This document shows, piece after piece, positions 1 to 35,614 of a stretch of 64,000 nucleotides of DNA. The translations under genes and the position numbers were made by a program. The notes beneath the pieces were generated by a model. That model saw nothing but the letters and a program-made list of their open reading frames with translations. It was not told where the DNA came from and did no database searches. The stretch's first letter is position 1, and each line of letters starts with the position of its first letter. Source of the DNA: Iphione sp. A-MEVVRFRX5 (taxonomy: Eukaryota); contig OZ320313.1 of NCBI GenBank assembly GCA_976226885.1, positions 52,142,001 to 52,206,000 on the forward strand. The letters are read 5' to 3'.

Positions 1-934
1 CAATTTCTCTGGGCTTTCTTTAGGCTGTGGGACCCTGTTCATTTATTCTGGGATCTAGATTGAGGTGGGAAAAGTGCCCCTTAAAACAAAAGAAACAAAT
101 CGTCTTGACAAATTTTTTGAAACGGGAAACCATCTTTAGAATAATGAGTTTCCAGTGTCTTATGATCCTGTACAAACGAAAGTGATTTGTGTTTTGTTAT
201 GTTTCGATTGTTATTGTTTTGTATCGTTAATTGTCGGCCACACAGTTCCTGGTGGGAACTCATGCCCCGAAGAAAAAAATCCTACATCATTAAATAGACA
301 TGATGGCCCAAGCATCATGATCACTTGCTCTTTATTTGTCATGTGATTCTGCATAACAAGAAGTAGAATATGGCTGTGGAGAAATGTAAAACTATGGAGG
401 AATCAGATTTAGAATTTACATACTTGAAAGAGAAATGTAAACTTTACTTTAATTACCTCTTTAACTAGCTAGATATTTCTTAACTATTATGAGTAAAATC
501 TGTACCCTTAGAAAATCTATTTATGAACCGGCTTTCTCACCAGTATAATTCACTGGCAACATAAGTTATCGATTGCTCTCAGGTATAAACTTAAGCTTCT
601 AGAGCAGATAAACAACTTTAGGCAGTTTCCATGACTGTAATAGAGTCATGGGACACATCAGAAGACGCATAGTAGTTGCTTACCTTTGTTTAACTTTTTA
701 ACTATTATTTACAATGGCTCTTGACTGATAAAGTCGGCAGCAACAGTCGAAAAAAATCGAAATTACAGTCTCCATTTGGTTGCATAATCACTAAAAAGTT
801 CTCCGACTCATTTATTAAATTGAAAAAAAATCATCATTACGTTCTGACTCAGCCACCTTGCTCGTTCTGCTAAACTTGTAAGTAACCATCGTTTCCCATC
901 AGCACATTTCATTTTATATATGGGCCTTTTACAG

Positions 935-1082
935 GGAACCGGTGTGACGCCCGGTATGGTCCCTATGATAAAGAGACCTGCAGTGGCTGACAGTAAAAGT
1001 GGGATTCCCATGTACCAACCGAACACGGGCACTGCCGCCTACCAGCAAGCTCTGGCAGCAGTGCAGTTACAGCAGCCCTTCG
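935..1082 (+). CDS. mbl: Muscleblind-like protein, internal coding exon (KRP / SGIPxYQP / YQQAL...QLQQ region)
   Basis: Acceptor ttttacag|G at 934/935, donor TTCG|gtaagt at 1082/1083, phase 0 to 1. Translates GTGVTPGMVPMIKRPAVADSKSGIPMYQPNTGTAAYQQALAAVQLQQPF, matching the recalled Muscleblind motifs GMVP.KRPA..KSGIPVYQP..TAYQQ (insects) and KRPALEK...YQQALANMQLQQ (vertebrate MBNL). Upstream exons with the N-terminal zinc fingers are outside the window. Confidence 0.93.
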
Positions 1083-1870
1083 GTAAGTTGTCTCCGTCCA
1101 TTGGTTATCGTCCATCTCCCCTCAAGCTTGTGCGCACATATTCCCATGTTTTTCAAATCTGCATTGGTTTCCTTCTTCCGCCATCTCTTCTATGCCAAAT
1201 TATTTTACTGGGTCTCCAGTAGGAACCATTTATTACACTTTTAACATTATAAAGTCCATAAGTGCATCGAAAATGATCGATTTCTTTATTAATTCTGCCT
1301 TGCAACATTGCAGTCCTCTTATAACTATTATTTCACAGTTTTGGAATTGGGAAGATCACCGTTATGTTAATGTTGACATCTCTTTTCCCAGTTTCTGACT
1401 ATGAACTGCAATTCAGTCCGTCAAGATGATTGGTCAAGCTACATATAGATACATGTGTATATATGTATATGTACATATATATGTTTACATGTATGCTATA
1501 TAATGTAATGGAACTGCTTCATTTGAGTCAATTAAACCAAATTTACGCTGGTTAAGTTATTGGTTTGTAAACGTGAAAGGCAATCGCCAGTGCAAACTGC
1601 CCTCTACTTGCTTTCTCGACACAGTTTCCCTGCTAATTGTTGTTGCGAGTGCACATTATGTCAGCTATATAAAGGTGGTACTAAGGAGATCCCTTCTCGA
1701 CAACATCGATATAATGCAGTCTCGCTTCATGGTCACTCACTGCATATGTGTTTCTACTGCCGCTCTATCTAATGGAAAATGCTGAATGGATATTTTGATG
1801 AATACTCTTAAGAGGAACTGTTCAATGATATCCGATACCTATGCATATGTATAGAATTGCACCGGTTTTT

Positions 1871-2013
1871 TCTGACGGTCAAATGTTGATGTTTCTCTTT
1901 TCATGCCTTCTCCTGTCGCTTGTTCCTGGCGCGCACACTCTGCATGCTGTCACTCATGTGCTTTCCAACCATCCAATCGCTGGCCTTGTTTACTGTGTTG
2001 CCATGCCAACCAG
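1871..2013 (+). promoter_or_regulatory. Splicing-regulatory 3' intron end: distant branch point, AG-exclusion zone, YGCY cluster, RBFOX site
   Basis: No AG dinucleotide from 1855 to 2011. CTGAC branch-point consensus with A at 1875, 138 nt upstream of the acceptor, followed by a pyrimidine tract. YGCY at 1904, 1917, 1945, 1959, 1978, 1999, 2004; TGCATG at 1941-1946. Confidence 0.55.
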
Positions 2014-2117
2014 TGTCCCTGATTTCCAACGGCCAAGCGGCAGCCGTCAGCGCAGCCGCCGCCGGTGCCCTGGTCTCCAACGCCACTAGTGTTAATTACT
2101 TTGACGAGGCCAATCAG
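2014..2117 (+). CDS. mbl: Muscleblind-like protein, Ala-rich linker exon (probably alternative; 104 nt, phase 1 to 0)
   Basis: Acceptor ccaaccag|T, donor AATCAG|gtagcg. Joins exon 935-1082 (phase 1) to exon 4077 (phase 0) in frame: (V)SLISNGQAAAVSAAAAGALVSNATSVNYFDEANQ. The Ala-rich composition and terminal ANQ resemble the vertebrate MBNL exon ending ...ATANQ. Confidence 0.85.
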
Positions 2118-4076
2118 GTAGCGGTTTACAAATGAGCTTTGGGCATTTCCTAAGCCTGGCCCGCGACGGATCACAGCCCCTACCGATCTAAGGAGAGATT
2201 CCTTACCACACCCTTTCATGCAAAGTGCTTTCATAGGGAAATAGACCCCATGCCAAATTTCAAGAATGGAGTTTTGGTCGACGGCGATCAATTTCCAGAG
2301 AAACACGTTTTGACATTGAAGAGACCTTTGCCCCCGTTTTCAATGTTATAAGATGGCTACTAAAGATGCGCAGGCTTTCGTAGTAGTTTTGCCAATGTTT
2401 TATGCAGATGTATACGTCCCTTAATGGTGTGGCTAAAACAAGGCGATCCTGACCGAAAGGGCTTAGAAGTGGCTTTTTGTAGGCTTGCTGCTTATATGAA
2501 AGGTACTCCACGACCCCCTTTCCTGTCCTGTTCCTACCTTTAAGTCCAGACCATGTACACTTTTCACCTAGCTGTCAACTTTACCTGGAACGGAAAATTT
2601 GCGTAATGCAGCATTGCATGCAAATTTCAGTCTCTGGATTCATCTTCGTTTTAAAAGGCTCCAAATTATGCAAATGAAACCGCGTGATTTGGGAGTGTGT
2701 ATGGTATGAGGAAAAGGGCTTTGGTCCAATGGTTGAGGTTGCTCTGAGCCAAATTCCAATCCCCCATGGACAAGAGTGTTGCTATTCATACTCCAAAGAA
2801 GCTGAATATAACTGTTGTTCAAACAAGATAGAACTCGGGCTTTATTTGCTCTTGTAATCGTTGTAGGATATTCCCCTTCTGCCCTATACCCTTTGCCCTT
2901 ATCCCAACATTAAGTTTCCGCCAAGGATTGTGAAGTCGTCGGTTCGAAAGGCCGCCAGTAGACTGTTAGATCACCGCAGCTTCGTCGTACCCTAACAGCT
3001 AAGAATTGCAGCTTTTTGGCTGGCTTACATATTTGCAGCAAGCCTTCTCTTCATTTTCCTCTATATCAAGTTATAAGTAGTTTCAATGTAATGTTCAGTG
3101 ATTATCAGAACAAGAATGAATTTCGAATCTTTTCGACATTTTAACCTTGAACGACTGGAAGGAGTGGCTATACTTTAACTCCTGAAAAATTTCTATCGGT
3201 TTTTCTTTTTCAAATAGTGCATGACTTCTGAATTAACATTGACTTTCATCCTCGTAACCAAAAAGTACTTCTCTAGCGTACTCATACCAGTGAACGTATC
3301 ACTTAGACATGACAAAATTAACAAATCACAAAATCAAATTGAAGGGCTCTAATCATATACACAGAAGAGTACATGTCTGCTCCAACTGCATGCATGTGAT
3401 GCTTAAAAACTAAACTGCTTGCCAAAAATCAAACATGAAGCTTTCTTTCTATCGCACTACAAGCTACAATCAATGTCTTACACAGCCTATGCTTCAGCAC
3501 TAACATCCTAGCTCCTACTTTCGCCTTATTCCTTAGTTTCTTCACAGGACGGTTTTGTTTCAGAGGTTTATTCTAAGTTTTAAATGGTATCCTTTTTTCT
3601 ACAAGTGATTGTCCATGTTTTTCAGTAGAAAGACAATTGGGCTAACAGGGACTTCCACTTATGTGCATGGTATTTCAAGTTCATTTTCACACATACATTG
3701 TTCAGGCCTAACATTTTCGGAACACTGCGGAGAAGGAAACAGTGATCAAACATGATATTTACAGGATTCTTCACATTATTTTCAGTTTCACGTAATCGCA
3801 ATATACACCTTGATCCATATAATGCACATTTGGAAATCCTCTTGTACAAATACACGGCCAGTGACGCTAGGTTTGTTTTCTCACCCTGAAGAAATAGTAT
3901 GGTATCTGGGTTTTTCCCGTCACGTCTTAGTATGAAAAGAAACATTTCCTACATTAACGACGCAAATGCACACACTGACACACATGTTAAACAGACATAC
4001 AAGACTGGAAGCAACATACGCCAAGTTTCGCTAGCAGAGAATGACACCTAAGTTGCGGATTTGTTGACCTTTTCAG

Positions 4077-4161
4077 TTGCTGGACACCCTCCCAATTTGC
4101 CGAGATTTTAAATCTGGACAGTGCAAGCGGCCACAATGCAAATATGTTCACCTTGTAGAGG
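4077..4161 (+). CDS. mbl: Muscleblind-like protein, CCCH zinc-finger exon (C-x7-C-x4-C-x3-H); dual reading frame
   Basis: Acceptor cttttcag|T, donor GAGG|gtatgt. Frame 0 reads LLDTLPICRDFKSGQCKRPQCKYVHLVE, similar to the recalled insect Mbl second tandem finger LDTLPVCQDF..C.R..C.FVHL. The phase-1 frame reads VAGHPPNLPRF* (stop 4109-4111). Confidence 0.93.
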
Positions 4162-4937
4162 GTATGTACATGCTTCCAGCTTTCATATGCTACGCCTATT
4201 CATGTATTTTGTATTCTTTCCGAATTTCTTTCTCGATAATGGCGTCGCTGGTGTCGGAATTGATGGCGGTCACTCTCTCACTGTAACAGGCAAGTCAAAA
4301 CCTTGCCAGGTTCAAGTGTGCAGCAGTATCAGTCCTAAACGTTCCGGATAAATTCTACTGCAAGGGAAAATATAGTCGGTAAATCGGAACTGTTGATGCA
4401 CTTAAATAAATCTAGCCGATGTGTAAACATCTCCCATACCACCTCAGAAGAAAGAAGCTGCGCAAATGATTGTTGAATATGGGGTACCGCTATGGTGTTT
4501 CTGTGTGTTCCCTGGACTACGATTAAAGCGAACGTCACCGAAAATGTTGATTTAGATACCACTGCACTCTCTGCTAAACTGCTCCTCTCCGAAGCAACAG
4601 CTGCATGTGAGCTTTCTCTCACAGACAAAGGGCTAACTGTTCATACCGCTCCTGGGCGCACTCACCGTTTTTGTTTAATGTAAACATAACGACTTTATAT
4701 TAGCTATTTGTATTCATAACTTGCAGTTTCAATACCGTCTAGTTATAAATTCCTAGTTGTGCAATATCCATTTATCCTATTTTGTCTTCGAAATAGGTCA
4801 GATAAGTGGGATGATTGGTTGGTCAACAATTCTTTGTCAAATCATTCTCATATCTTCCTGTTCACCATAAATGAGAGGTTGGTCTCATTTGATTATATGG
4901 TATCTCATTTTATCCTCTGCGTTTGCGTATCTTTCAG

Positions 4938-5059
4938 ATTATGTTGAAGTAACGGATGGGAAAGTCACTGTATGTAGGGATGCTGCCAAAGGACGATGCT
5001 CTCGGCCGATGTGCAAATACTACCACATCCCTATGGTACCCCAACTCCTTGTGGGTTAA
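4938..5059 (+). CDS. mbl: Muscleblind-like protein, last coding exon with second CCCH finger and stop
   Basis: Acceptor ctttcag|AT, phase 1 matching the upstream donor. Reads (D)YVEVTDGKVTVCRDAAKGRCSRPMCKYYHIPMVPQLLVG*; V.V.DGKVTVC.D..KGRC.R..CKY.H is the MBNL finger signature. Confidence 0.92.
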
Positions 5060-6480
5060 TCAATGAACTTAAATAGTCTCCTTCTCGAAGCTTTCACCAA
5101 CCCAACCAAATAATGAGGTCAACGACACAACGTAACAAAACAGAACCAGAAATCATCGTCAAAGAAGAATAATGTATCATCACCAAGTCTTCACTTCAAG
5201 TTAGGAGACCAGCGTCTCAGCCGTTGCAATCGAATCTTATGGTGTCGTAAGAAATACGTATTTACGTTCACTTTTAGACTTTATTTCCTTTTTTTAAAGA
5301 GATGTTAAGAAAGACACATAAGTTGTTATTATTACGTTTATGACATAATGACATTATGTCTCATGTAACCATGGCAACCAGATGTACATTATATATACAC
5401 GTACAAGAAACTTGAATTTCGAAGGTCGAAGTGTACAAGTTAAGCTGACAGTGTTCAGAGATGGTTACCAAAGTCTCCAAAGTTCACTTGATATATGATA
5501 GATATTGCATATAGATTCATGTTGAGTATTTATACTCGTATGATTCTTCTCTTGATTCCTATCATGGTTGCCCTCTGATGATGCCCTAGACAACTGGTGC
5601 AACACGCAGAGTTCTGTTTTGACATTATGTTCCGTGTAACGATAGTGTTAATAGTAATGTAGGATCTACATATTACGGTACATATATAATGCCATAAATT
5701 GGTTAAGTTGTTGTTACTGTGTTGTTACTTTTAACTGCCAAAAAAGGGAACCAGAACGAGACAGGTGATTCCATAAAAGGAACTGGTGAACTACAAATCG
5801 GTCACTAGAGGTCTTAATGAACCTGCAGACCGTTCCTAGAAGTAATGTCACCAGAATGGTGGCACTGTGGTGAAAACGATAAAGTCACAATGTCGGTAGT
5901 GACGATGACGATACTTGTTGTTCTGAGCCAGGCTCAGAGTTTTTTGGTGCTTACTTTATCTGACTCCTCTAATGTTGCTAACTGGTGCAAGCATTGGAAT
6001 CGGTGCCTTGAGTGCTTATCGAGATGAGAGAGAGGGCTAGGTTGGTTAGACTGAACGCAACCCTAAGGAGAGATAATCGCATAAAAACCAAGAGAAGAAA
6101 TCGAAAATAGGAGCTCTGCCATTGACATGGCCCGAGTAACCTGCAACATAATGTGAAAACAGATCTGCACTCGAGGGATATTGTCCCTACATAAATATAT
6201 CTGGGGTGTCGCTTCCTGACCTTTTATATTTTGCATTATACGTTTGATTACCCATCCCTGTGCTTCAACTTAGTACTCCATAACAAGGCATAAATAAGCT
6301 TGCATGTATACTAATGACCTGGTTCTTGTTGTTTTCCTTTTATTCAACCAATTTCTGAAATCTTTGTCAGTTTAATGTTTAAGTTGGTAATGAAACCATG
6401 ATCACAAATGTATCAATCCCATAATGATTACAATGAGGAAATGATTATGTAACAGGTGCAATTAAATTGCATTTGTACCA
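5060..6480 (+). other. Probable 3' UTR of the muscleblind-like gene
   Basis: AT-rich, ORF-poor sequence after the stop codon. The end is inferred from the candidate poly(A) signal; there is no transcript evidence. Confidence 0.4.
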
Positions 6481-6495
6481 TTTTTATATGTGTTA
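6461..6495 (+). terminator. Candidate polyadenylation site (ATTAAA, CA, U/GU-rich downstream element)
   Basis: ATTAAA at 6461-6466, CA at 6479-6480, then tttttatatgtgtt; TGTA motifs upstream. I saw no AATAAA on the + strand between the stop codon and ~9900. Confidence 0.33.
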
Positions 6496-9400
6496 CATAT
6501 ACAGATATAAGAGAACCATTTGTCTGATGTGCCATATACTTGATTTTTAATCTTGAGGTCATTTTACTATTACAATGATTTTGTGTCTAATCTATGAGTC
6601 CAGCAATTTCCATGCTGCCTTGTTAATAGTTAAGATGGTTTTATACATATAACCATTACCAGGTGGTTTCATCTTAGATAGTTTTAGTTTTAGTTAGACA
6701 TGAATTGGTTTTTATTTCAATATAGTAGGTTGAATACTCCCTGATTTTAGAAGTTGTGTAGATACATATATAACACATACCTAGACAACACATAAGCAGG
6801 AGTTGACACTCCACGGTGAATGTAGTATACCGTAGCAAACAGATGAAATACTTGAATTGTTTTTGAGTCACAGACTACCTACATTTATTCAGTAGTTTAT
6901 ACCCACTTGTTTGATCCATAGCGTCTATTCGCCGAGTGAATTATACGGTGTGAGTCTAAGTATATTGACCGTGGCAAGTGCCAATGCATGATCTGATACA
7001 ATTCCTGCAAAAAATGCCAGCCCTGTGCATGGTTTTGGTCGAATTTAAGGCACACTCTCCTCGCTCGATATGATAACAGAAATCAGCTTCAGGCACGCCA
7101 ACGCAACTGTCACCAAATGTATTAGGTCCGAGCCCCAACAATGTGGAGAAAACTAACGAGCGCTTACTGCTCTCCGTTGAGACCTAAACGGCGCCCTCTC
7201 AACTTCTGTCTTCGTCACCAAGCGAATGGAGACTGGAGGGAATGGTGTCGCTTCAGTTGGGAATTGGTAATGGTTTGGCTAGCACATGTGTCTAAACTGG
7301 CGCCATAGGGGCGAGTGGCAGGAAACTTTCTGCCTCTATATATTGTGGTCTTTGGCGACACACACCAGTCTACATTCGTAATGTGATACTGACTTTTTCT
7401 CTCTTTACTGTATCTAAAGATAACATGTTTTATGAAATTATTCGCAAAAGACCGGTTATGAACTGGTTGACATTGGCTTTAACCGGCTTGATGCTCGCAG
7501 AGCATTGCACTCTCACGCAAAGACAAACCCTCTTCTTGACATTTCTGACACACCCTGCGCCGTGTTAAATGTGCTTATCTGACAGGTTTTATGAGGCAAT
7601 AGACTGATGTATTGGTGCAGAACAGGGCTCCCGTGCGTATTTGTTGTAGTTAAAGGTTCGCTGGTGCAAAGCTAAAAGTGTTGGTGCAAAGGCATCTCTC
7701 TGCAAAGGTTTGCCGCTGCAAAGATATGGCACTGCACAGATGTACAGGTGCGAAGTGAATTAACTTGGCTGCAAATATCCAGCGTTGGCACGATAGAGGT
7801 CCCGTATTTTCGTGGGCTCTGTCAGATAAAGGTATAGGAGGAACTAGGTAGAACGGAGAGGTGCTGATTAAAAAATGATGTGAAGAATCCTGATCGCACT
7901 GCAAAAACGGGGACCGAGGTTTTTGGTCCTGATGGATGATGGCAGAGTACAGTGTAGTCAGAGAACGACTAGCGGTTAAAGATGAAAAGCCATAGGTACT
8001 GTGGCGAAATAATACACAGTGCATTCTGGAGAACAAACCAGGTCGGTACGTTTTTGTGATGCGGCAATTAGACATATCATACTGTACCCAATACTGTTTT
8101 AATACTTAGGTGATACTGAAGAGCGAAACAAAAACACAAGATTCCATCTGATAGCGGTCCTCGAAAACCGTTTAAAATCTTTGAAACCTCCCATGGAAAC
8201 TCCTTTCATGTAGCCTAGTTAGTTATATCCAAGTATGTATGTTTGTCCTAATGATATAGTCACTTGCACCGTAATTCTAGTAAACCATGTATGTGTACGA
8301 TAATCGCCACACCGTCATGTAATTGATCATGTAAAGTGTTTTATGTACACGATAAGCTAACAGACCTCTTAATGTACAGAGGCCTGTACGAACGACTTTC
8401 ATTATAATGAATTTTAGGTAATTATCACGCATAGCATCCAAGTGAAATTCTAAATATTCTGACCATATATGATAGTTACTATTTTTGAATGTAAAAATGC
8501 AAAAAAATACTAAAAAATATATAAGAAACATGGTTACGAATTTGAAAAGCAGATAAAATTTCACAACATAATTTTGTGATATTTTATTATCAATGTTGCG
8601 TCGAATACGTAGTAGTGTAATAATGTATTGTAGTTGTTACCTAGGTTCTTTCATATCTTGTCTCGACTTCAATGGAAACTGGAAAGCCCTTCAAACTAAA
8701 GGGGTCCACTGTGTTCGTGACGGCTCCCATGCTGAACCGTCGGTTCAGTAATTTCTTATATGTATGTACAGTTCTGTCACACTGTTACCAACGTGGTCGA
8801 ACTCCAGCCATTGCTTGTTGTTACTACAGTAAAATGTAACGATGGCAACTTAGAATATTGAGAGAAGCAAGCGAAGACAAGAGGGTTTCCCCCCTTCTAT
8901 GTGTATTTGTGTTTAGAGCTGAGGTATAGGAAAGGACAGAAGGAATGAGGCATTTTCAGATAGTGTGGAGAAAGAAAAACATTGCCTAGGCAGGAGTGCA
9001 AGCCATTCAGGTCTGAGACAACTAGGGTTTTTTTGGTTTCCTTTTGTTACGACTCTGTTGATTTGCAAATCCCATGGCCACTACAACGGCAACCCTATGT
9101 CAAACATAGGCAGGTGTCGATGATTGTTGTATAATTGTTACTCGAAATATTGAGGATTTTTTCCTGCTTTTTTTCTCACTACTTTTTTTATTTTCGAAGG
9201 AGAGATGGTATTTAAGGACATCAAATGTTCTTCTTTCAAGATATTTTAAGCATTGCGAAACGAGAGTGTGGCGAGAGGAGAAAAAGGTTTTATGCTCAAC
9301 GAATGCCTATCGGAAAGATGCATCCTGCATGCAATGTACAGTTCGCTTTGTGTGGGCCTATGGCAGTGCGCCGCCCGGGGCTGACAAACGCCACACTGTC

Positions 9401-10623
9401 AAACGGCTCTAGAGCTGCTAAACTGTCAAACTGTCAAACAGTCATCAGTGCTGCATACCATGCCTGGCTGCCGTAGTGTTACTAGGCTGCACATTGTAAA
9501 GTATCTTGAAAGAGACCCCTCATCCAAACCTTTTGTTTTCCTTTATCATCGAAAAACATAAATAGTGCGAGTATAACTTAAGAGCGTGCCCCATTGGCCG
9601 TTAACATCGCTTTAACCGCATGCTTATGGAAGAAAGACCTCTCTGTATTTGCGAAAGAACACGTCTTATGGCATTAAGAACATTGATTTCAAGATACATT
9701 ATCCCTTCCTAAATCCAGCACTAGAGCCCCCCTCACTGTCATATTGAGCTTGTAATCCTAGGTAGCCAACCAATGCTTCTGCTTTTCTGCATCTCAAGGT
9801 AACCGTTAAGACGATTACGAGTTTGTTGGTTATTTTTTTTCAATACGGCTTCACTCTGTGTCTGTCTGCTTTGCTCTCCATGCTCTGAGTACGCGCGGTG
9901 AAAATAAATGCTGAATTCAGAGTATACGCATTCTTATGTGTTGTGCCTTCTTTTGCATGGGCCATGTAGTCGAAAGGCGCTTTTTGACGATAAAATCGCC
10001 GGCCTCACTTTCCCGATTAACGGGAAGCAAGCCTGTTTTTTCGCTCCTTTTTTCCTGACGTATAAAGAAACCAGCACCAAGCTTTATGTGTGCTTCTTGT
10101 CACCTGGGAAGTTGGAAGATGTTCGTACACAAAACGAAACCCTCTGCCCTTGACATCCCTATATATAATTGCCCTCCCCCATCGCCCCTTCCAATCAACC
10201 ATCTCACCCACCCACCAAACCCAACCAGCGGGAAACGTTTCATCGCCTCGTCTTTGGCCTCAGGAGTGCTGTTTTATAGACTGCGACCCGCTATAGATCG
10301 ATCAACCCTCGAACGTAACCTTTAAAAACACTGTAGACGACCTTGTTCTCACTCTACAGTAACAAGAAAACTGGAAGTTGAATCGTGCTGCAGATCCATG
10401 TGCCTGTTATTAGGGACTGTTCCTTTGTTTTGAGGACAACTAATAACCTCGCCCACCACACACACAAAAAAACAAAACAACCCCTAAATTTATACGATAA
10501 AAGATCTCCCGGGTAGGTGGTTATCATTCGCTTTTTGTTTGCCTCCACAGCCCTCGGTCGCAGCCATGTTTCAACTGTGATAACACGAACGCTGAAGTGC
10601 TCTTAACAAGCGCGCGCAGTCTC

Positions 10624-10672
10624 GGTTCAGTGAACTGGAACGGGGTCAACCAGAGGTCACGCACATAGTTCA
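10624..10672. promoter_or_regulatory. Composite nuclear-receptor response element (IR1 + ER6 + DR5 + DR7)
   Basis: Half-sites GGTTCA 10624-29, TGAACT 10631-36, GGGTCA 10643-48, AGGTCA 10654-59, AGTTCA 10667-72. GGGTCA-n5-AGGTCA matches the DR5 RARE consensus. Confidence 0.5.
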
Positions 10673-13600
10673 ACCACAGCCACTTGTTACATGCGCGGGG
10701 ATTGGTTGGTTGGCTTTTGTTTCTCATGTTTTTGCCAGATGATAACTTGCAATTGGATGGAAATATCACTGATGTCCTCCTGTATAGTTGAGATACAACA
10801 CATATATCACATGTTCCCTTTTCAGTAGACAAAGAAAAATTTTTAAAGTCATTTTGAAAAATATTTAGGTCAGAATCTTTGCCATTATTTCATATGAAGG
10901 AATGAAATGAAGATGTTAGAGTTTTCAAGTATTTCGAACTTTCAAGTCCCCTACCAGAGTTCTACAACAAATTATGCATGTTTTGTTGCTTTGAAATCTA
11001 GACACACATCTATTGGACTTATATATGCACAATCACATATATCTTCGTGTAATAATGAGATCTAACTTCACCTTATGCCTGGATGCTTATGTTTAACTTG
11101 GAATGGGGTGCCACCCATCGTTGCCTCTATGTCCCAAACGGCCGATTAATGATCCATTGATGCAATCCATCATGAAGCCTCCAAGCTTCCCTCAAACGCC
11201 GTCCGCTAGAAGGCGCCTCTCACCATGCTACATCATACAAAAAAACACCATTTGGACAAATTCTAGGGCTTTTTTGGCAAGAATTGCTGTGTGCAAACTG
11301 CTTCTGCTTTTGTTATTGGATATTTAATTGTCTCTTTTTATTATTGGGAAAGGAAGATAAACGTCAAGGCAAGATCTTAAATCTTTGTCCGATGAGTCAT
11401 GTAGCACTTGAAGCTTATAGTTTTTTCATGAATTATTGACGTCCTGGTTTTTTTCGCATTTCCTACACATTGTGGGCAGCATTTAAGAAGACTGTAAAAT
11501 GTTTATAATTATTATTCAATTCATATAAGGCCAAATGCATCTAGAGTGAAGATGATACTCACTTTTATCTCGGGGTTTGCATAGCATACCCCTGTTTTTA
11601 ATGAAGCCAATTGGTAGACAGTATTTCATTTACTTCTTTGCTATATTATAAATACAGAGTCCACGGTGACTGAAAATCATGTTATTATTGAAGAAAACTT
11701 AGATGTGATGATGTTAATTGTCAGAGAAATGGTGCTGGCAAGGGACATGGTTGTTTTCATAGACCGAGTCTGTGGTAAACTTCCACCTGGAGACGTTTTA
11801 GGCTTTGGGGGAATTGCACCCAAACAACCCCACCAGTCAAATATTTGGGGCAAAATTATGGCTAAACCATTCCAGGCATAGCAACATAGAATGTGTGTCC
11901 ACGATATGAGATATATGATATTCATTCTTTATCATTTTATTATCATTATGAACAAAAGGAAATAAATACTTTTGAATGAAGACCAATGGATAACAAAGAC
12001 TGCATCTGTGATATATTCCTATTTTGTGAGGGTTTATTTGTGAACTCTTTCATAAGCACATGAGGACGGCATAGGTGATGTAATGGAGATTGAGATCGCC
12101 CTTTGCGTGCTCTCTGGGTGTATCTTTCTTAGACGCCCATTAAATGTTGAACCAAGAGAAATCTATGCAGACTGGGGAAGGAGACCTCCTGCTCCACCTG
12201 TCGGTCACATATGAAGAAGACCAGTGGATTCTGGCATTTTGTTGAAACATTCGCAGTGGGTATCGGCGAAGTACAGCAGGGAACGTACAGGCCAATCTCC
12301 AATCTCCAATGCTTCTGGTTTTCAAATGGATCAGTGAATACTGAGGGTGGGTAAGGCTTCCCCAGGAGCGAGAACCTCCCCGGCTGGGCTCTTCAATCCG
12401 GCTCCCAACTTACCTTTTTTCATGAATTTCACAAGGTGCTGCCATAGTGTTGCAACCCTTCTCACACGGATGGGGGTAAATAGGACATTTCTGGTATTTA
12501 TATCCCTTGAACGAAAGGTCAAAGGGGGAAGTACAACACGAAAAGCCATAGGGAAATACTAGCATATATACGAAGTATGGTGCTAGAGACAAACATTATG
12601 ATTGGGAAATACGATCTCCCTTGGCAGGTATGATGCTAGGGTACAAGTGGAGGACATGCCACGTTCCCACGTCATTGCCCAAAAAAGGTCTTGTCGACTG
12701 AAGGCGCAATAGTACCGAGTCCAGCAGGTTTATGATTATATATATACGGGACAGTCTCTTTCGTTTTATACCTGACTCCGTAGTTGTGATTACAAGTTGT
12801 CATTTGTCCTTTCAATTAAATTGAACAGCGCGTGGAAACTCGCCCCTTTTTCATGCGACCGCAATTGGCAGCGTTGGCAGGCCCGACTGTCAGGCTGTGG
12901 AGACAAAATAAGTTCGGAAACTTTAAAAATTGCAACAATGAAATGGTTTAGGCGGCATTGTCACCAGGCCAGGCCATTCGGGGCCCTTTAATAAGGTACA
13001 AGAGAGTGCTGTTAAGGTACCACCGCCAATATGGATTCCTCTTCACAAGTGTTAGTCAATGAAACCTTAACACGAAATGTAAATTTGAGGGAGAAGGTAG
13101 GAGTGACATTTAAACATGTTATGCTATCTTCAGGGTTGGCAAATCAGGCAGGAGTACTCCATGGTACATATGACAGAGAGCGTTATTATATGTCATCTCA
13201 AAGCAGTATGTTAAAAGACGGTTTCCTATGTGAGTATTTCACATTACTATAGGGTAGAGACATTACCTGCATGTATATCCAAAATAAGACCAAGGCAGAA
13301 TCCTTCTATCACATTTGTATAAAAAAATTCTAACTGTTACATACACCTATATATCGTCTTTATATTTACGTCCCTTGCTTTCCTCTGACGTCAGTAATAT
13401 CATATTGCACTGCCTAATCGTGGGGAGTTGCCGATCCAGGCAGACGATAGCGGTAGATGTGGGCGGAGCGGGCGTGGAACCTGGCCATCAATTTCTACTT
13501 GTACGAAGCCCCGATGGCAGGCATAAAGTCTAGGTATTCTTTTGTTCTAGTCCATGAGTTGTCAGATTCCACTCTTGAAACTACGCAAGCCTTTCAAAAT

Positions 13601-35473: not shown

Positions 35474-35614
35474 NNNNNNNNNNNNNNNNNNNNNNNNNNN
35501 NNNNNNNNNNNNNNNNNNNNNNNNNNNNNNNNNNNNNNNNNNNNNNNNNNNNNNNNNNNNNNNNNNNNNNNNNNNNNNNNNNNNNNNNNNNNNNNNNNNN
35601 NNNNNNNNNNNNNN
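35474..35614. other. Assembly gap (141 N)
   Basis: Run of N characters. Confidence 0.99.

What the first reader, a model, noticed from the sequence alone, without database searches (positions are those of the whole stretch)
1855..2013. Probable Muscleblind autoregulation cassette controlling the frame-switch exon
Seen: a 157-nt AG-free stretch before a pyrimidine-poor acceptor, a CTGAC branch point 138 nt upstream followed by the real pyrimidine tract, seven YGCY motifs in ~105 nt (about 1.6 expected at uniform base composition) and one TGCATG. Established: MBNL binds YGCY and represses exons when bound upstream; RBFOX binds UGCAUG; human MBNL1 autoregulates its exon 5 via an intron end with a reported distant branch point (~140 nt) and a YGCY cluster. 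Inference: the same architecture here sits on a different exon, which resembles the vertebrate ...ATANQ exon, so high Mbl would cause skipping and cut off its own C-terminal fingers as a feedback loop.
Basis: partly seen in the sequence, partly recalled or inferred. Interest (0 to 1): 0.75.

Follow-up and report, generated by a model that had tools for sequence, protein, structure and literature searches.

The report
Conserved splice switch before muscleblind's frame-shift exon
The last 160 bases of the intron before an optional 104-base exon of this invertebrate's muscleblind gene are more conserved than the exon itself and look like a landing pad for splicing repressors that decide whether the protein gains an extra pair of RNA-binding zinc fingers, but self-regulation by Muscleblind remains unproven.

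Summary
Positions 1855-2011 are a 157-nt AG-free zone. It holds a CTGAC 138 nt from the acceptor, a distal pyrimidine tract, seven YGCY and one TGCATG, and ends at exon 2014-2117 (104 nt, shifts the frame).

Including the exon reads two further CCCH fingers (4077-4161, 4938-5059). Skipping it reads ..QQPF-VAGHPPNLPRF*, the MblC-type end. Both forms are annotated in molluscs, arthropods and amphioxus. The exon matches Drosophila AE3 (mbl-C versus mbl-O/P), so exon and switch are already known.

What appears unreported is the cis element:
- In a related species, intron 1891-2013 is 92% identical, against 78% for the exon and about 47% for the flanks.
- In oysters, Pinctada, Lymnaea and a barnacle the same exon also has a 157-540-nt AG-free zone holding exactly one TGCATG.

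Support for Muscleblind feedback is weaker. The YGCY count matches what the local dinucleotide composition predicts (P=0.49), bivalves have only 3-4 motifs, and fly work reported no crosstalk between mbl-C and mbl-O/P.

Best reading: a repressor platform between a distal branch point and the acceptor, probably read by RBFOX and perhaps by Mbl. No RNA data could be obtained for this species.

The scan had already noted a sister cassette 2.3 kb upstream (NLS exon) and the dual-frame exon.

The parts
935..1082 (+). Exon A (148 nt, ..MIKRPAVADSKSGIPMYQP..YQQALAAVQLQQPF). It ends with one base of a codon and has a GTAAGT donor.
   Evidence: Sequence and frame. A 49-aa query found 54 Mbl proteins or fragments. 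Boundaries are inferred; there is no RNA from this species.
1855..2011 (+). AG-exclusion zone of 157 nt, the regulatory intron end.
   Evidence: It aligns with the related species exactly from 1854 onward, while the rest of the 931-nt intron does not align.
1872..1876 (+). CTGAC, the predicted distal branch point (A1875, 138 nt from the acceptor).
   Evidence: Only CTRAY match in 1800-2013. It is conserved in the relative, where an AG follows it directly and the AG-free zone starts there. Not mapped experimentally.
1891..1935 (+). Distal polypyrimidine tract.
   Evidence: Best 25-nt window has 22 Y at about -124. Oysters (-150) and Pinctada (-121) have the same arrangement.
1941..1946 (+). UGCAUG (RBFOX consensus), 73 nt before the exon. 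It overlaps a YGCY (UGCAUGCU).
   Evidence: Exactly one TGCATG lies in the AG-free zone of the same exon in all seven species examined.
1904..2007 (+). Seven YGCY motifs (starts 1904, 1917, 1945, 1959, 1978, 1999, 2004), candidate Mbl sites.
   Evidence: All seven are identical in the relative. The count is not above dinucleotide expectation.
2014..2117 (+). Exon B, a 104-nt frame-switch cassette (V)SLISNGQAAAVSAAAAGALVSNATSVNYFDEANQ, matching Drosophila AE3.
   Evidence: Orthologous exons of 101, 122, 107, 326 and 44 nt are all 2 mod 3. Proteins that include it are seen.
2118..2150 (+). Weak donor GTAGCG and a conserved downstream intron stretch. Read-through would give ..EANQVAVYK*.
   Evidence: 79% identity to the relative against about 48% further on. 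Donors are GTAGCG, GTAACG, GTACGA and GTAGTA across species.
4077..4161 (+). Exon C (85 nt), read in two frames: LLDTLPICRDFKSGQCKRPQCKYVHLVE (ZnF5) after exon B, or (V)AGHPPNLPRF* after skipping.
   Evidence: It is 85 nt in Magallana, Pinctada and barnacle. Both frames are conserved in the relative.
4938..5059 (+). Exon D: ZnF6 (DYVEVTDGKVTVCRDAAKGRCSRPMCKYYHIP..) and the stop codon of the long isoform.

Best explanation
Positions 1855-2013 are a conserved splicing-control module for an ancient optional exon of muscleblind.

Proposed mechanism:
- The intron probably uses a branch point about 138 nt upstream (CTGAC), followed by its pyrimidine tract. The next roughly 120 nt up to the acceptor are kept free of AG.
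- That stretch serves as a single-stranded platform for repressors.
- Proteins bound between the branch point and the acceptor block use of the acceptor. The best candidate is RBFOX on the conserved UGCAUG at -73. Muscleblind may act with it on the YGCY motifs.
- Exon B is then skipped and the mRNA encodes the four-finger MblC-type protein ending ..AGHPPxxPRF.
- Without these proteins the exon is included, the frame shifts, and a third pair of zinc fingers is added.

Shown: the anatomy, its conservation, both reading frames, and both isoform classes in other animals.
Inferred: the branch point position, the identity of the bound proteins, and the direction of regulation.

My odds: regulated silencer platform 0.85, RBFOX involved 0.55, Mbl itself involved 0.35.
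For: Constraint:
- Intron 1891-2013 is 92% identical to a species in which exon B is 78%, exon A 75% and flanking intron about 47% identical.
- The Magallana and Saccostrea zones are about 97% identical.

Architecture in five further species:
- The AG-free zone before exon B is 157-540 nt, with a distal pyrimidine tract.
- Other coding exons have 15-91 nt. The exceptions are the NLS exon, the GC-rich barnacle's exons C and D (168, 117 nt) and two Lymnaea exons (183, 265 nt).
- One TGCATG lies in every zone. Expected counts are 0.08-0.23 each, about 3e-4 jointly for four independent lineages.
- GCATG lies within 100 nt of only 1 of the 25 other acceptors examined.

The exon is alternative:
- Skip and include protein classes occur across molluscs, arthropods and amphioxus. 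Seven transcript-sized Logan contigs carry the skip form.
- Both frames are intact in this species and in its relative.
- Drosophila AE3 behaves the same way (PMC9352392).

Other points:
- No stable RNA fold (z=+1.05) and no Rfam match, which fits a protein platform.
- Precedents: the YGCY region between a -141 branch point and the acceptor represses MBNL1 exon 5 (PMC7901844). In C. elegans, FOX-1, for which there is a conserved upstream GCAUG site, and MBL-1 both repress mbl-1 exon 7 (PMC10773944).
- YGCY-preserving Y-to-Y changes occur in bivalves: CGCT/TGCT.
Against: - No RNA data for this species: no run was listed, so exon use, branch point and regulation are all inferred.
- Fine-scale conservation rests on one related species.
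- YGCY is not enriched beyond the local composition and is sparse in bivalves.
- Fly data show no crosstalk between mbl-C and mbl-O/P.
- The UGCAUG position varies (-33 in barnacle, -232 in Lymnaea).
- Proximal branch-point candidates (CTCAT at 1953, TTTAC at 1989) are conserved too and cannot be excluded.
- The pyrimidine tract would suit PTB equally well.
Confidence: 0.6

Rival explanations
1. Pure Muscleblind autoregulation. Mbl binds the seven YGCY motifs, represses exon B and so removes its own C-terminal finger pair as a feedback loop.
For: - Seven YGCY in 105 nt is the window maximum, and all seven are conserved in the relative.
- The layout matches the MBNL1 exon 5 intron.
- The neighbouring NLS exon of the same gene carries the same design with 12-13 YGCY.
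- YGCY-preserving substitutions occur in bivalves.
- UGCAUGCY composite sites occur in three lineages.
Against: - The count equals the dinucleotide expectation (P=0.49).
- Bivalves have only 3-4 YGCY, and the barnacle count is at background.
- The whole block is conserved, so the motifs are not singled out.
- In Drosophila there is no crosstalk between mbl-C and mbl-O/P, and O/P is unaffected by MBL-C overexpression.
- The skip product is the active MblC form, so there is no loss-of-activity feedback.
Confidence: 0.3
2. Regulation by a polypyrimidine-tract or other hnRNP-type repressor (PTB/hephaestus, CELF/Bruno on UGU). RBFOX and Mbl motifs would be incidental.
For: - Long CU-rich tracts (TTTCTCTTTTC, CCTTCTCCTGTC) and seven TGT in 1891-2011.
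- Exons with distant branch points are a known class of regulated exons (statement quoted in PMC7901844).
Against: - CU tracts are generic.
- The feature shared by every lineage is UGCAUG, not a PTB or CELF motif.
- No test of these proteins was possible.
Confidence: 0.2
3. The zone is merely an unusual constitutive 3' splice site. It would be conserved because a distant branch point needs an AG-free spacer, with no trans-acting regulation.
For: AG depletion downstream of a distal branch point is mechanically required. No RNA evidence for this species.
Against: - An AG-free spacer needs no 92% sequence identity.
- Skip isoforms are widespread, and the skip-frame tail is conserved in this species and its relative.
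- Fly AE3 is cell-type specific.
Confidence: 0.1
4. The conserved block has a non-splicing role, such as a transcriptional enhancer, a small RNA or minus-strand coding.
For: High non-coding conservation alone does not name a function. ORFs exist on the minus strand.
Against: - The block abuts the acceptor exactly and begins at the predicted branch point.
- No Rfam match and no stable fold.
- Substitutions show no codon periodicity.
- The same layout recurs before the same exon in distant phyla without sequence identity.
Confidence: 0.03

Closest known systems
Human/mouse MBNL1 exon 5 autoregulatory intron (Gates 2011 as described in PMC7901844), and its invertebrate counterpart, C. elegans mbl-1 exon 7 (PMC10773944)
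   Same: Far-distal branch point (-141 against a predicted -138). A regulatory stretch of about 90-120 nt between branch point and acceptor carrying YGCY. Intron conserved at least as well as the exon. An upstream GCAUG with FOX-1 co-repression in the worm. Same gene family.
   Different: It sits on a different exon: not the 54-72-nt NLS cassette, which in this genome lies 2.3 kb upstream with 12-13 YGCY, but a 104-nt frame-shifting exon. YGCY is not enriched over the local composition. The acceptor is CAG, not AAG. Mbl dependence is untested and not seen in flies.
Drosophila mbl alternative exon AE3 (mbl-C versus mbl-O/P; Pamudurti et al. 2022, PMC9352392)
   Same: Exclusion gives the MblC end. 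Inclusion changes the frame and adds two zinc fingers. The two isoforms share the last exon(s) and the 3' UTR.
   Different: The paper describes isoforms, their cell types and circRNA feedback, not the cis elements before AE3. Orthology is inferred from its description and from mosquito proteins. The fly intron could not be fetched here.
Exons with long AG-exclusion zones and distant branch points (Gooding et al. 2006, from memory; statistics quoted in PMC7901844)
   Same: AG-free zone over 100 nt, pyrimidine tract next to the distal branch point, association with regulated cassette exons.
   Different: This instance is conserved at the same exon across at least four invertebrate lineages and carries a conserved UGCAUG.
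RBFOX position-dependent repression through upstream (U)GCAUG
   Same: A single conserved UGCAUG within the last 33-232 nt of the upstream intron.
   Different: No binding or functional data exist. The site lies between the predicted branch point and the acceptor.

Membership tests
MBNL-autoregulated cassette of the MBNL1 exon 5 type | Long AG-free zone implying a far-distal branch point | tested here: met
   157 nt AG-free, CTGAC at -138, pyrimidine tract at about -124. The branch point itself is not mapped.
MBNL-autoregulated cassette of the MBNL1 exon 5 type | YGCY cluster between branch point and acceptor, in excess of chance | tested here: inconclusive
   7 against 1.3-1.9 background, the window maximum. 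Dinucleotide shuffles give 6.5 (P=0.49). Bivalves have 3-4. The NLS exon control has 13 against 8.4 (P=0.0075).
MBNL-autoregulated cassette of the MBNL1 exon 5 type | Exon is an alternative cassette | tested here: met
   Indirect. Both isoform classes occur in many species, both frames are intact here and in the relative, and there is fly AE3. No reads for this species.
MBNL-autoregulated cassette of the MBNL1 exon 5 type | Inclusion responds to Mbl/MBNL level | not testable with these tools
   The only bearing data are from Drosophila: no crosstalk between mbl-C and mbl-O/P, which argues against.
MBNL-autoregulated cassette of the MBNL1 exon 5 type | Intron end conserved like an ultraconserved element | tested here: met
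   92% against exon 78% with one relative. About 97% between two oysters. There is no sequence-level conservation across phyla, unlike the NLS intron, which is about 88% identical between this species and oysters.
RBFOX-repressed exon | Conserved (U)GCAUG in the proximal upstream intron | tested here: met
   One TGCATG in the zone in 7 of 7 species; joint chance about 3e-4.
RBFOX-repressed exon | Inclusion responds to RBFOX | not testable with these tools
   No data. Rbfox1 motifs in fly mbl have been noted only bioinformatically (PMC8742874).
mbl frame-switch exon (Drosophila AE3 type) | Length not divisible by 3. Inclusion opens a C-terminal CCCH pair and skipping gives the MblC tail. | tested here: met
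   104 nt. Orthologues of 101, 122, 107, 326 and 44 nt are all 2 mod 3.

The most novel reading that the evidence does not exclude
The bilaterian ancestor's muscleblind gene carried two consecutive cassettes of the same design: distal branch point, AG-free platform, UGCAUG plus YGCY. Through the second one, Mbl and RBFOX together set how many zinc-finger pairs the protein has (two or three). That would be a second self-regulatory loop, older than 550 million years and lost in vertebrates when the exon fused with its neighbour and the third finger pair disappeared.
Probability: 0.3. Interest if true: 0.7.

Novelty: new member of a known kind. Interest (0 to 1): 0.5.

Why it matters
Muscleblind proteins are central to myotonic dystrophy, and their self-regulation has been studied at exon 1, at the NLS exon and through circMbl.

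The switch between the MblC-type protein and the form with an extra finger pair is cell-type specific in flies, but I found no described cis logic for it. A deeply conserved module with a fixed UGCAUG gives a concrete, testable regulator (Rbfox1). It may explain why neurons and muscle make mbl-C while photoreceptors make mbl-O/P.

It also offers an internal comparison of two cassettes in one gene, one with a strong Mbl signature and one with a weak one.

Tried and rejected
- More relatives:
  - The word search with the intron-plus-exon ORF gave one species.
  - Metagenome pattern scans gave nothing or a chance match in a microbial-looking contig, L013.
  - L008 holds exon A only.
- The look-up of encoding contigs does not hold non-longest isoforms (P0063, P0169, P0127). 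As a result, amphioxus, scorpion, spider and insect introns could not be examined.
- RNA structure: the zone folds no better than shuffles (z=+1.05; relative z=-1.6), so a structure-based explanation is rejected.
- Rfam: no family in 1-6000.
- Coding explanation for the conserved intron: an ORF runs through it, but there is no AG for an alternative acceptor and the substitutions are not codon-periodic. Rejected.
- Literature: searches found no paper on the regulation of this exon. The Gates 2011 paper is not held and was taken second-hand from PMC7901844.
- The vertebrate '..ATANQ' resemblance was not checked against a vertebrate sequence. The amphioxus isoform P0169 (..SNVPYFNAQNQ followed by fingers) is the nearest chordate evidence.
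- The third protein word search and the structure and complex tools were not needed.

Full report
**Where we are.** The window is G000:C1:52142001-52206000 of a 1.18-Gb invertebrate genome. Its first 5 kb hold the 3' part of a muscleblind gene on the + strand.
- From sequence, frames and homology I read these exons:
  - A: 935-1082
  - B: 2014-2117
  - C: 4077-4161 (CCCH finger)
  - D: 4938-5059 (CCCH finger and stop)
- Fetching 20 kb upstream showed that the ZnF3/4 exon lies 5.9 kb before the window. A 72-nt NLS mini-exon lies about 250-320 nt before it.
- The fingers in the window are therefore a third pair.
- The exon B region is single-copy in this genome.

**The observation.** All elements are present as described.
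- The AG-free zone is 157 nt (1855-2011).
- CTGAC at 1872 is the only CTRAY match in 1800-2013, 138 nt from the acceptor.
- The best pyrimidine tract is distal, at about -124.
- There are seven YGCY motifs and one TGCATG (1941).
- The other two AG-free stretches of 150 nt or more in the window are an N run and a CT repeat.
- Exon B is 104 nt. Conceptual splicing gives two products:
  - A-B-C-D: ..QLQQPF-VSLISNG..NYFDEANQ-LLDTLPICRDF.. with two intact CCCH fingers.
  - A-C: ..QLQQPF-VAGHPPNLPRF*.
- Against the window, seven YGCY per 105 nt is the maximum (0.3% of windows). Dinucleotide-preserving shuffles of the zone give 6.5 (P=0.49). The cluster follows from a GC-containing, pyrimidine-rich, AG-free composition.
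- The NLS exon's zone, by contrast, exceeds its own shuffles (13 against 8.4, P=0.0075).

**Is the exon alternative?** No sequencing run could be listed, so there is no RNA evidence for this species. The indirect evidence is strong.
- A search with exon A, followed by a search with the Lineus protein it found, returned annotated Mbl proteins. After exon A they fall into two classes:
  - Skip: ..QQPFVPVx-AGHPPSVPRF*, in nemertean, bivalves, gastropods, brachiopod, ticks, spiders, horseshoe crabs and beetles. Seven transcript-sized Logan contigs also carry it.
  - Include: ..exon B (..NAHSVNYFDxNxQ)-LLDTLPVC.. plus two fingers, in scallop, clams, oysters, Pomacea, scorpion, spider, lobster, many insects and amphioxus.
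- The skip and include forms differ only by this exon.
- Both classes are annotated within the bivalves Ruditapes and Dreissena.
- In the related species the exon is 101 nt and the skip frame of exon C reads ..AGHPPSVPRF*.
- Orthologous exons are 122 nt (Magallana), 107 (Pinctada), 326 (Lymnaea) and 44 (barnacle), all 2 mod 3. Exon C is 85 nt in Magallana, Pinctada and barnacle.
- The literature already describes the switch in Drosophila. Exclusion of alternative exon AE3 gives mbl-C. Inclusion changes the frame and adds two zinc fingers (mbl-O/P). mbl-C is found in brain neurons and muscle and mbl-O/P in photoreceptors (PMC9352392).
- So the exon and both products are known.

**Conservation of the intron end.**
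- An ORF that happens to run through the intron end and exon B found one Logan fragment. Its contigs are L004 and L006, from the same species at 99.9% identity.
- Within the 931-nt A-B intron only 1854-2013 aligns.
- Identity by segment:

| Segment | Identity |
|---|---|
| Intron 1891-2013 | 92% |
| Exon B | 78% |
| Exon A | 75% |
| Exon C | 94% |
| Exon D | 89% |
| Flanking intron | about 47% |

- CTGAC, all seven YGCY and TGCATG are identical in the relative.
- In the relative an AG follows CTGAC directly. Its AG-free zone therefore begins at the predicted branch point.
- The zone has no stable fold and no Rfam match.

**Across phyla.** I fetched the mbl loci of Magallana gigas, Saccostrea echinata, Pinctada imbricata, Lymnaea stagnalis and Amphibalanus amphitrite. 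I solved their exon junctions against the annotated proteins.

| Species | AG-free zone before exon B (nt) | TGCATG position | YGCY in zone |
|---|---|---|---|
| This species | 157 | -73 | 7 |
| Related species | 129 | -73 | 7 |
| Magallana | 171 | -81 | 3 |
| Saccostrea | 171 | -80 | 3 |
| Pinctada | 157 | -71 | 4 |
| Lymnaea | 294 | -232 | 8 |
| Barnacle | 540 | -33 | 19 (at background) |

- In each of these loci exon B has a long AG-free zone, with a distal pyrimidine tract and, in bivalves, a pyrimidine-poor acceptor region.
- Most other coding exons have 15-91 nt. The exceptions are the NLS exon (145-198 nt), two exons in the GC-rich barnacle, and two Lymnaea exons (183 and 265 nt).
- Each exon B zone contains exactly one full TGCATG. 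Expected counts are 0.08-0.23 per zone, about 3e-4 jointly for four independent lineages.
- GCATG lies within 100 nt of only 1 of the 25 other acceptors tabulated.
- Sequence-level similarity between this lineage and bivalves is limited to the tract, GCATG and short words.
- Within oysters the zone is about 97% identical, with a CGCT to TGCT change that preserves YGCY.
- In contrast, the NLS exon's intron is about 88% identical between this species and oysters, with three Y-to-Y changes inside YGCY motifs. That is a much clearer Mbl signature, and it serves as an internal positive control.

**Mechanism.**
- The layout matches the known MBNL1 exon 5 intron: branch point at -141, a weak acceptor, and a 90-nt YGCY region whose deletion abolishes repression (PMC7901844).
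- It also matches C. elegans mbl-1 exon 7, which MBL-1 and FOX-1 both repress; the paper reports a conserved GCAUG in the upstream intron as the putative FOX-1 site (PMC10773944).
- By the position rules for both protein families, binding upstream of the exon should cause skipping.
- I therefore read 1855-2013 as a repressor platform between a distal branch point and the acceptor. It would toggle the MblC-type and six-finger isoforms.
- RBFOX is the best-supported reader, because UGCAUG is the feature conserved everywhere.
- An inference, not a result: fly mbl-C is made in neurons and muscle, tissues where I recall Rbfox1 being expressed. That would fit Rbfox-driven skipping.
- Mbl may co-regulate. 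UGCAUGCY composites occur in three lineages.
- The fly study, however, found no crosstalk between mbl-C and mbl-O/P, and MBL-C overexpression had no effect on O/P.
- Skipping produces the active canonical isoform rather than a disabled one.

**Novelty and verdict.**
- Already known: the exon, the frame switch and both proteins. The scan had also already noted the dual-frame exon (s1-351965) and the sister NLS cassette (s1-327781).
- I found no paper describing the cis element before this exon or its conservation.
- I class it as a new member of a known kind (regulated exons with a distant branch point and an AG-exclusion zone, of the Mbl/RBFOX type), of moderate interest.
Its autoregulation reading is only partly supported.
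- Limits:
  - Exon boundaries are inferred.
  - Only one close relative was available.
  - No insect or amphioxus intron could be fetched.
  - Equating exon B with fly AE3 rests on the paper's description and on mosquito proteins.

Noticed in passing
L002:9480-9749 (window -520 to -251), compared with L005:28630-28833 and L012: The NLS mini-exon (72 nt) has a 198-nt AG-free zone with 13 YGCY. Its upstream intron is about 88% identical between this species and oysters, and three substitutions inside YGCY motifs are Y-to-Y. This is far deeper conservation than at exon B. An earlier scan report already covers it.
   Followed up: partly
window 5371-12065 against L004/L006: Long blocks downstream of the stop codon of exon D align at 70-77% with the related species, while most intron sequence does not. 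This is probably a long conserved mbl 3' UTR shared by both isoforms.
   Followed up: no
window 3977-4076: The 100 nt before the dual-frame exon C are 76-78% identical to the relative, against about 47% before exon D. The acceptor of exon C may be regulated too.
   Followed up: no
window 2118-2135; proteins P0088, P0100 (Ostrea edulis): Annotated oyster isoforms continue past exon B into ..NQQVTCARLCV.., which indicates a retained intron or an alternative 3' end. Here, read-through of the weak GTAGCG donor would end the protein as ..EANQVAVYK*. This would be a possible third outcome of the switch.
   Followed up: no
window 1070-1090 against L006:2290-2340: Exon A of this species ends ..QQPF with a GTAAGT donor. 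It lacks the VPV(T/S) codons found at this point in the relative and in nearly all other animals, so the junction residue differs (V instead of I/F). The boundary is unverified without RNA.
   Followed up: partly
protein P0169 (Branchiostoma lanceolatum isoform): Amphioxus has exon B followed by the third CCCH pair. This pair is therefore not restricted to protostomes and was probably lost in vertebrates.
   Followed up: partly
window 35474-35614: A run of 141 N (gap or masked).
   Followed up: no
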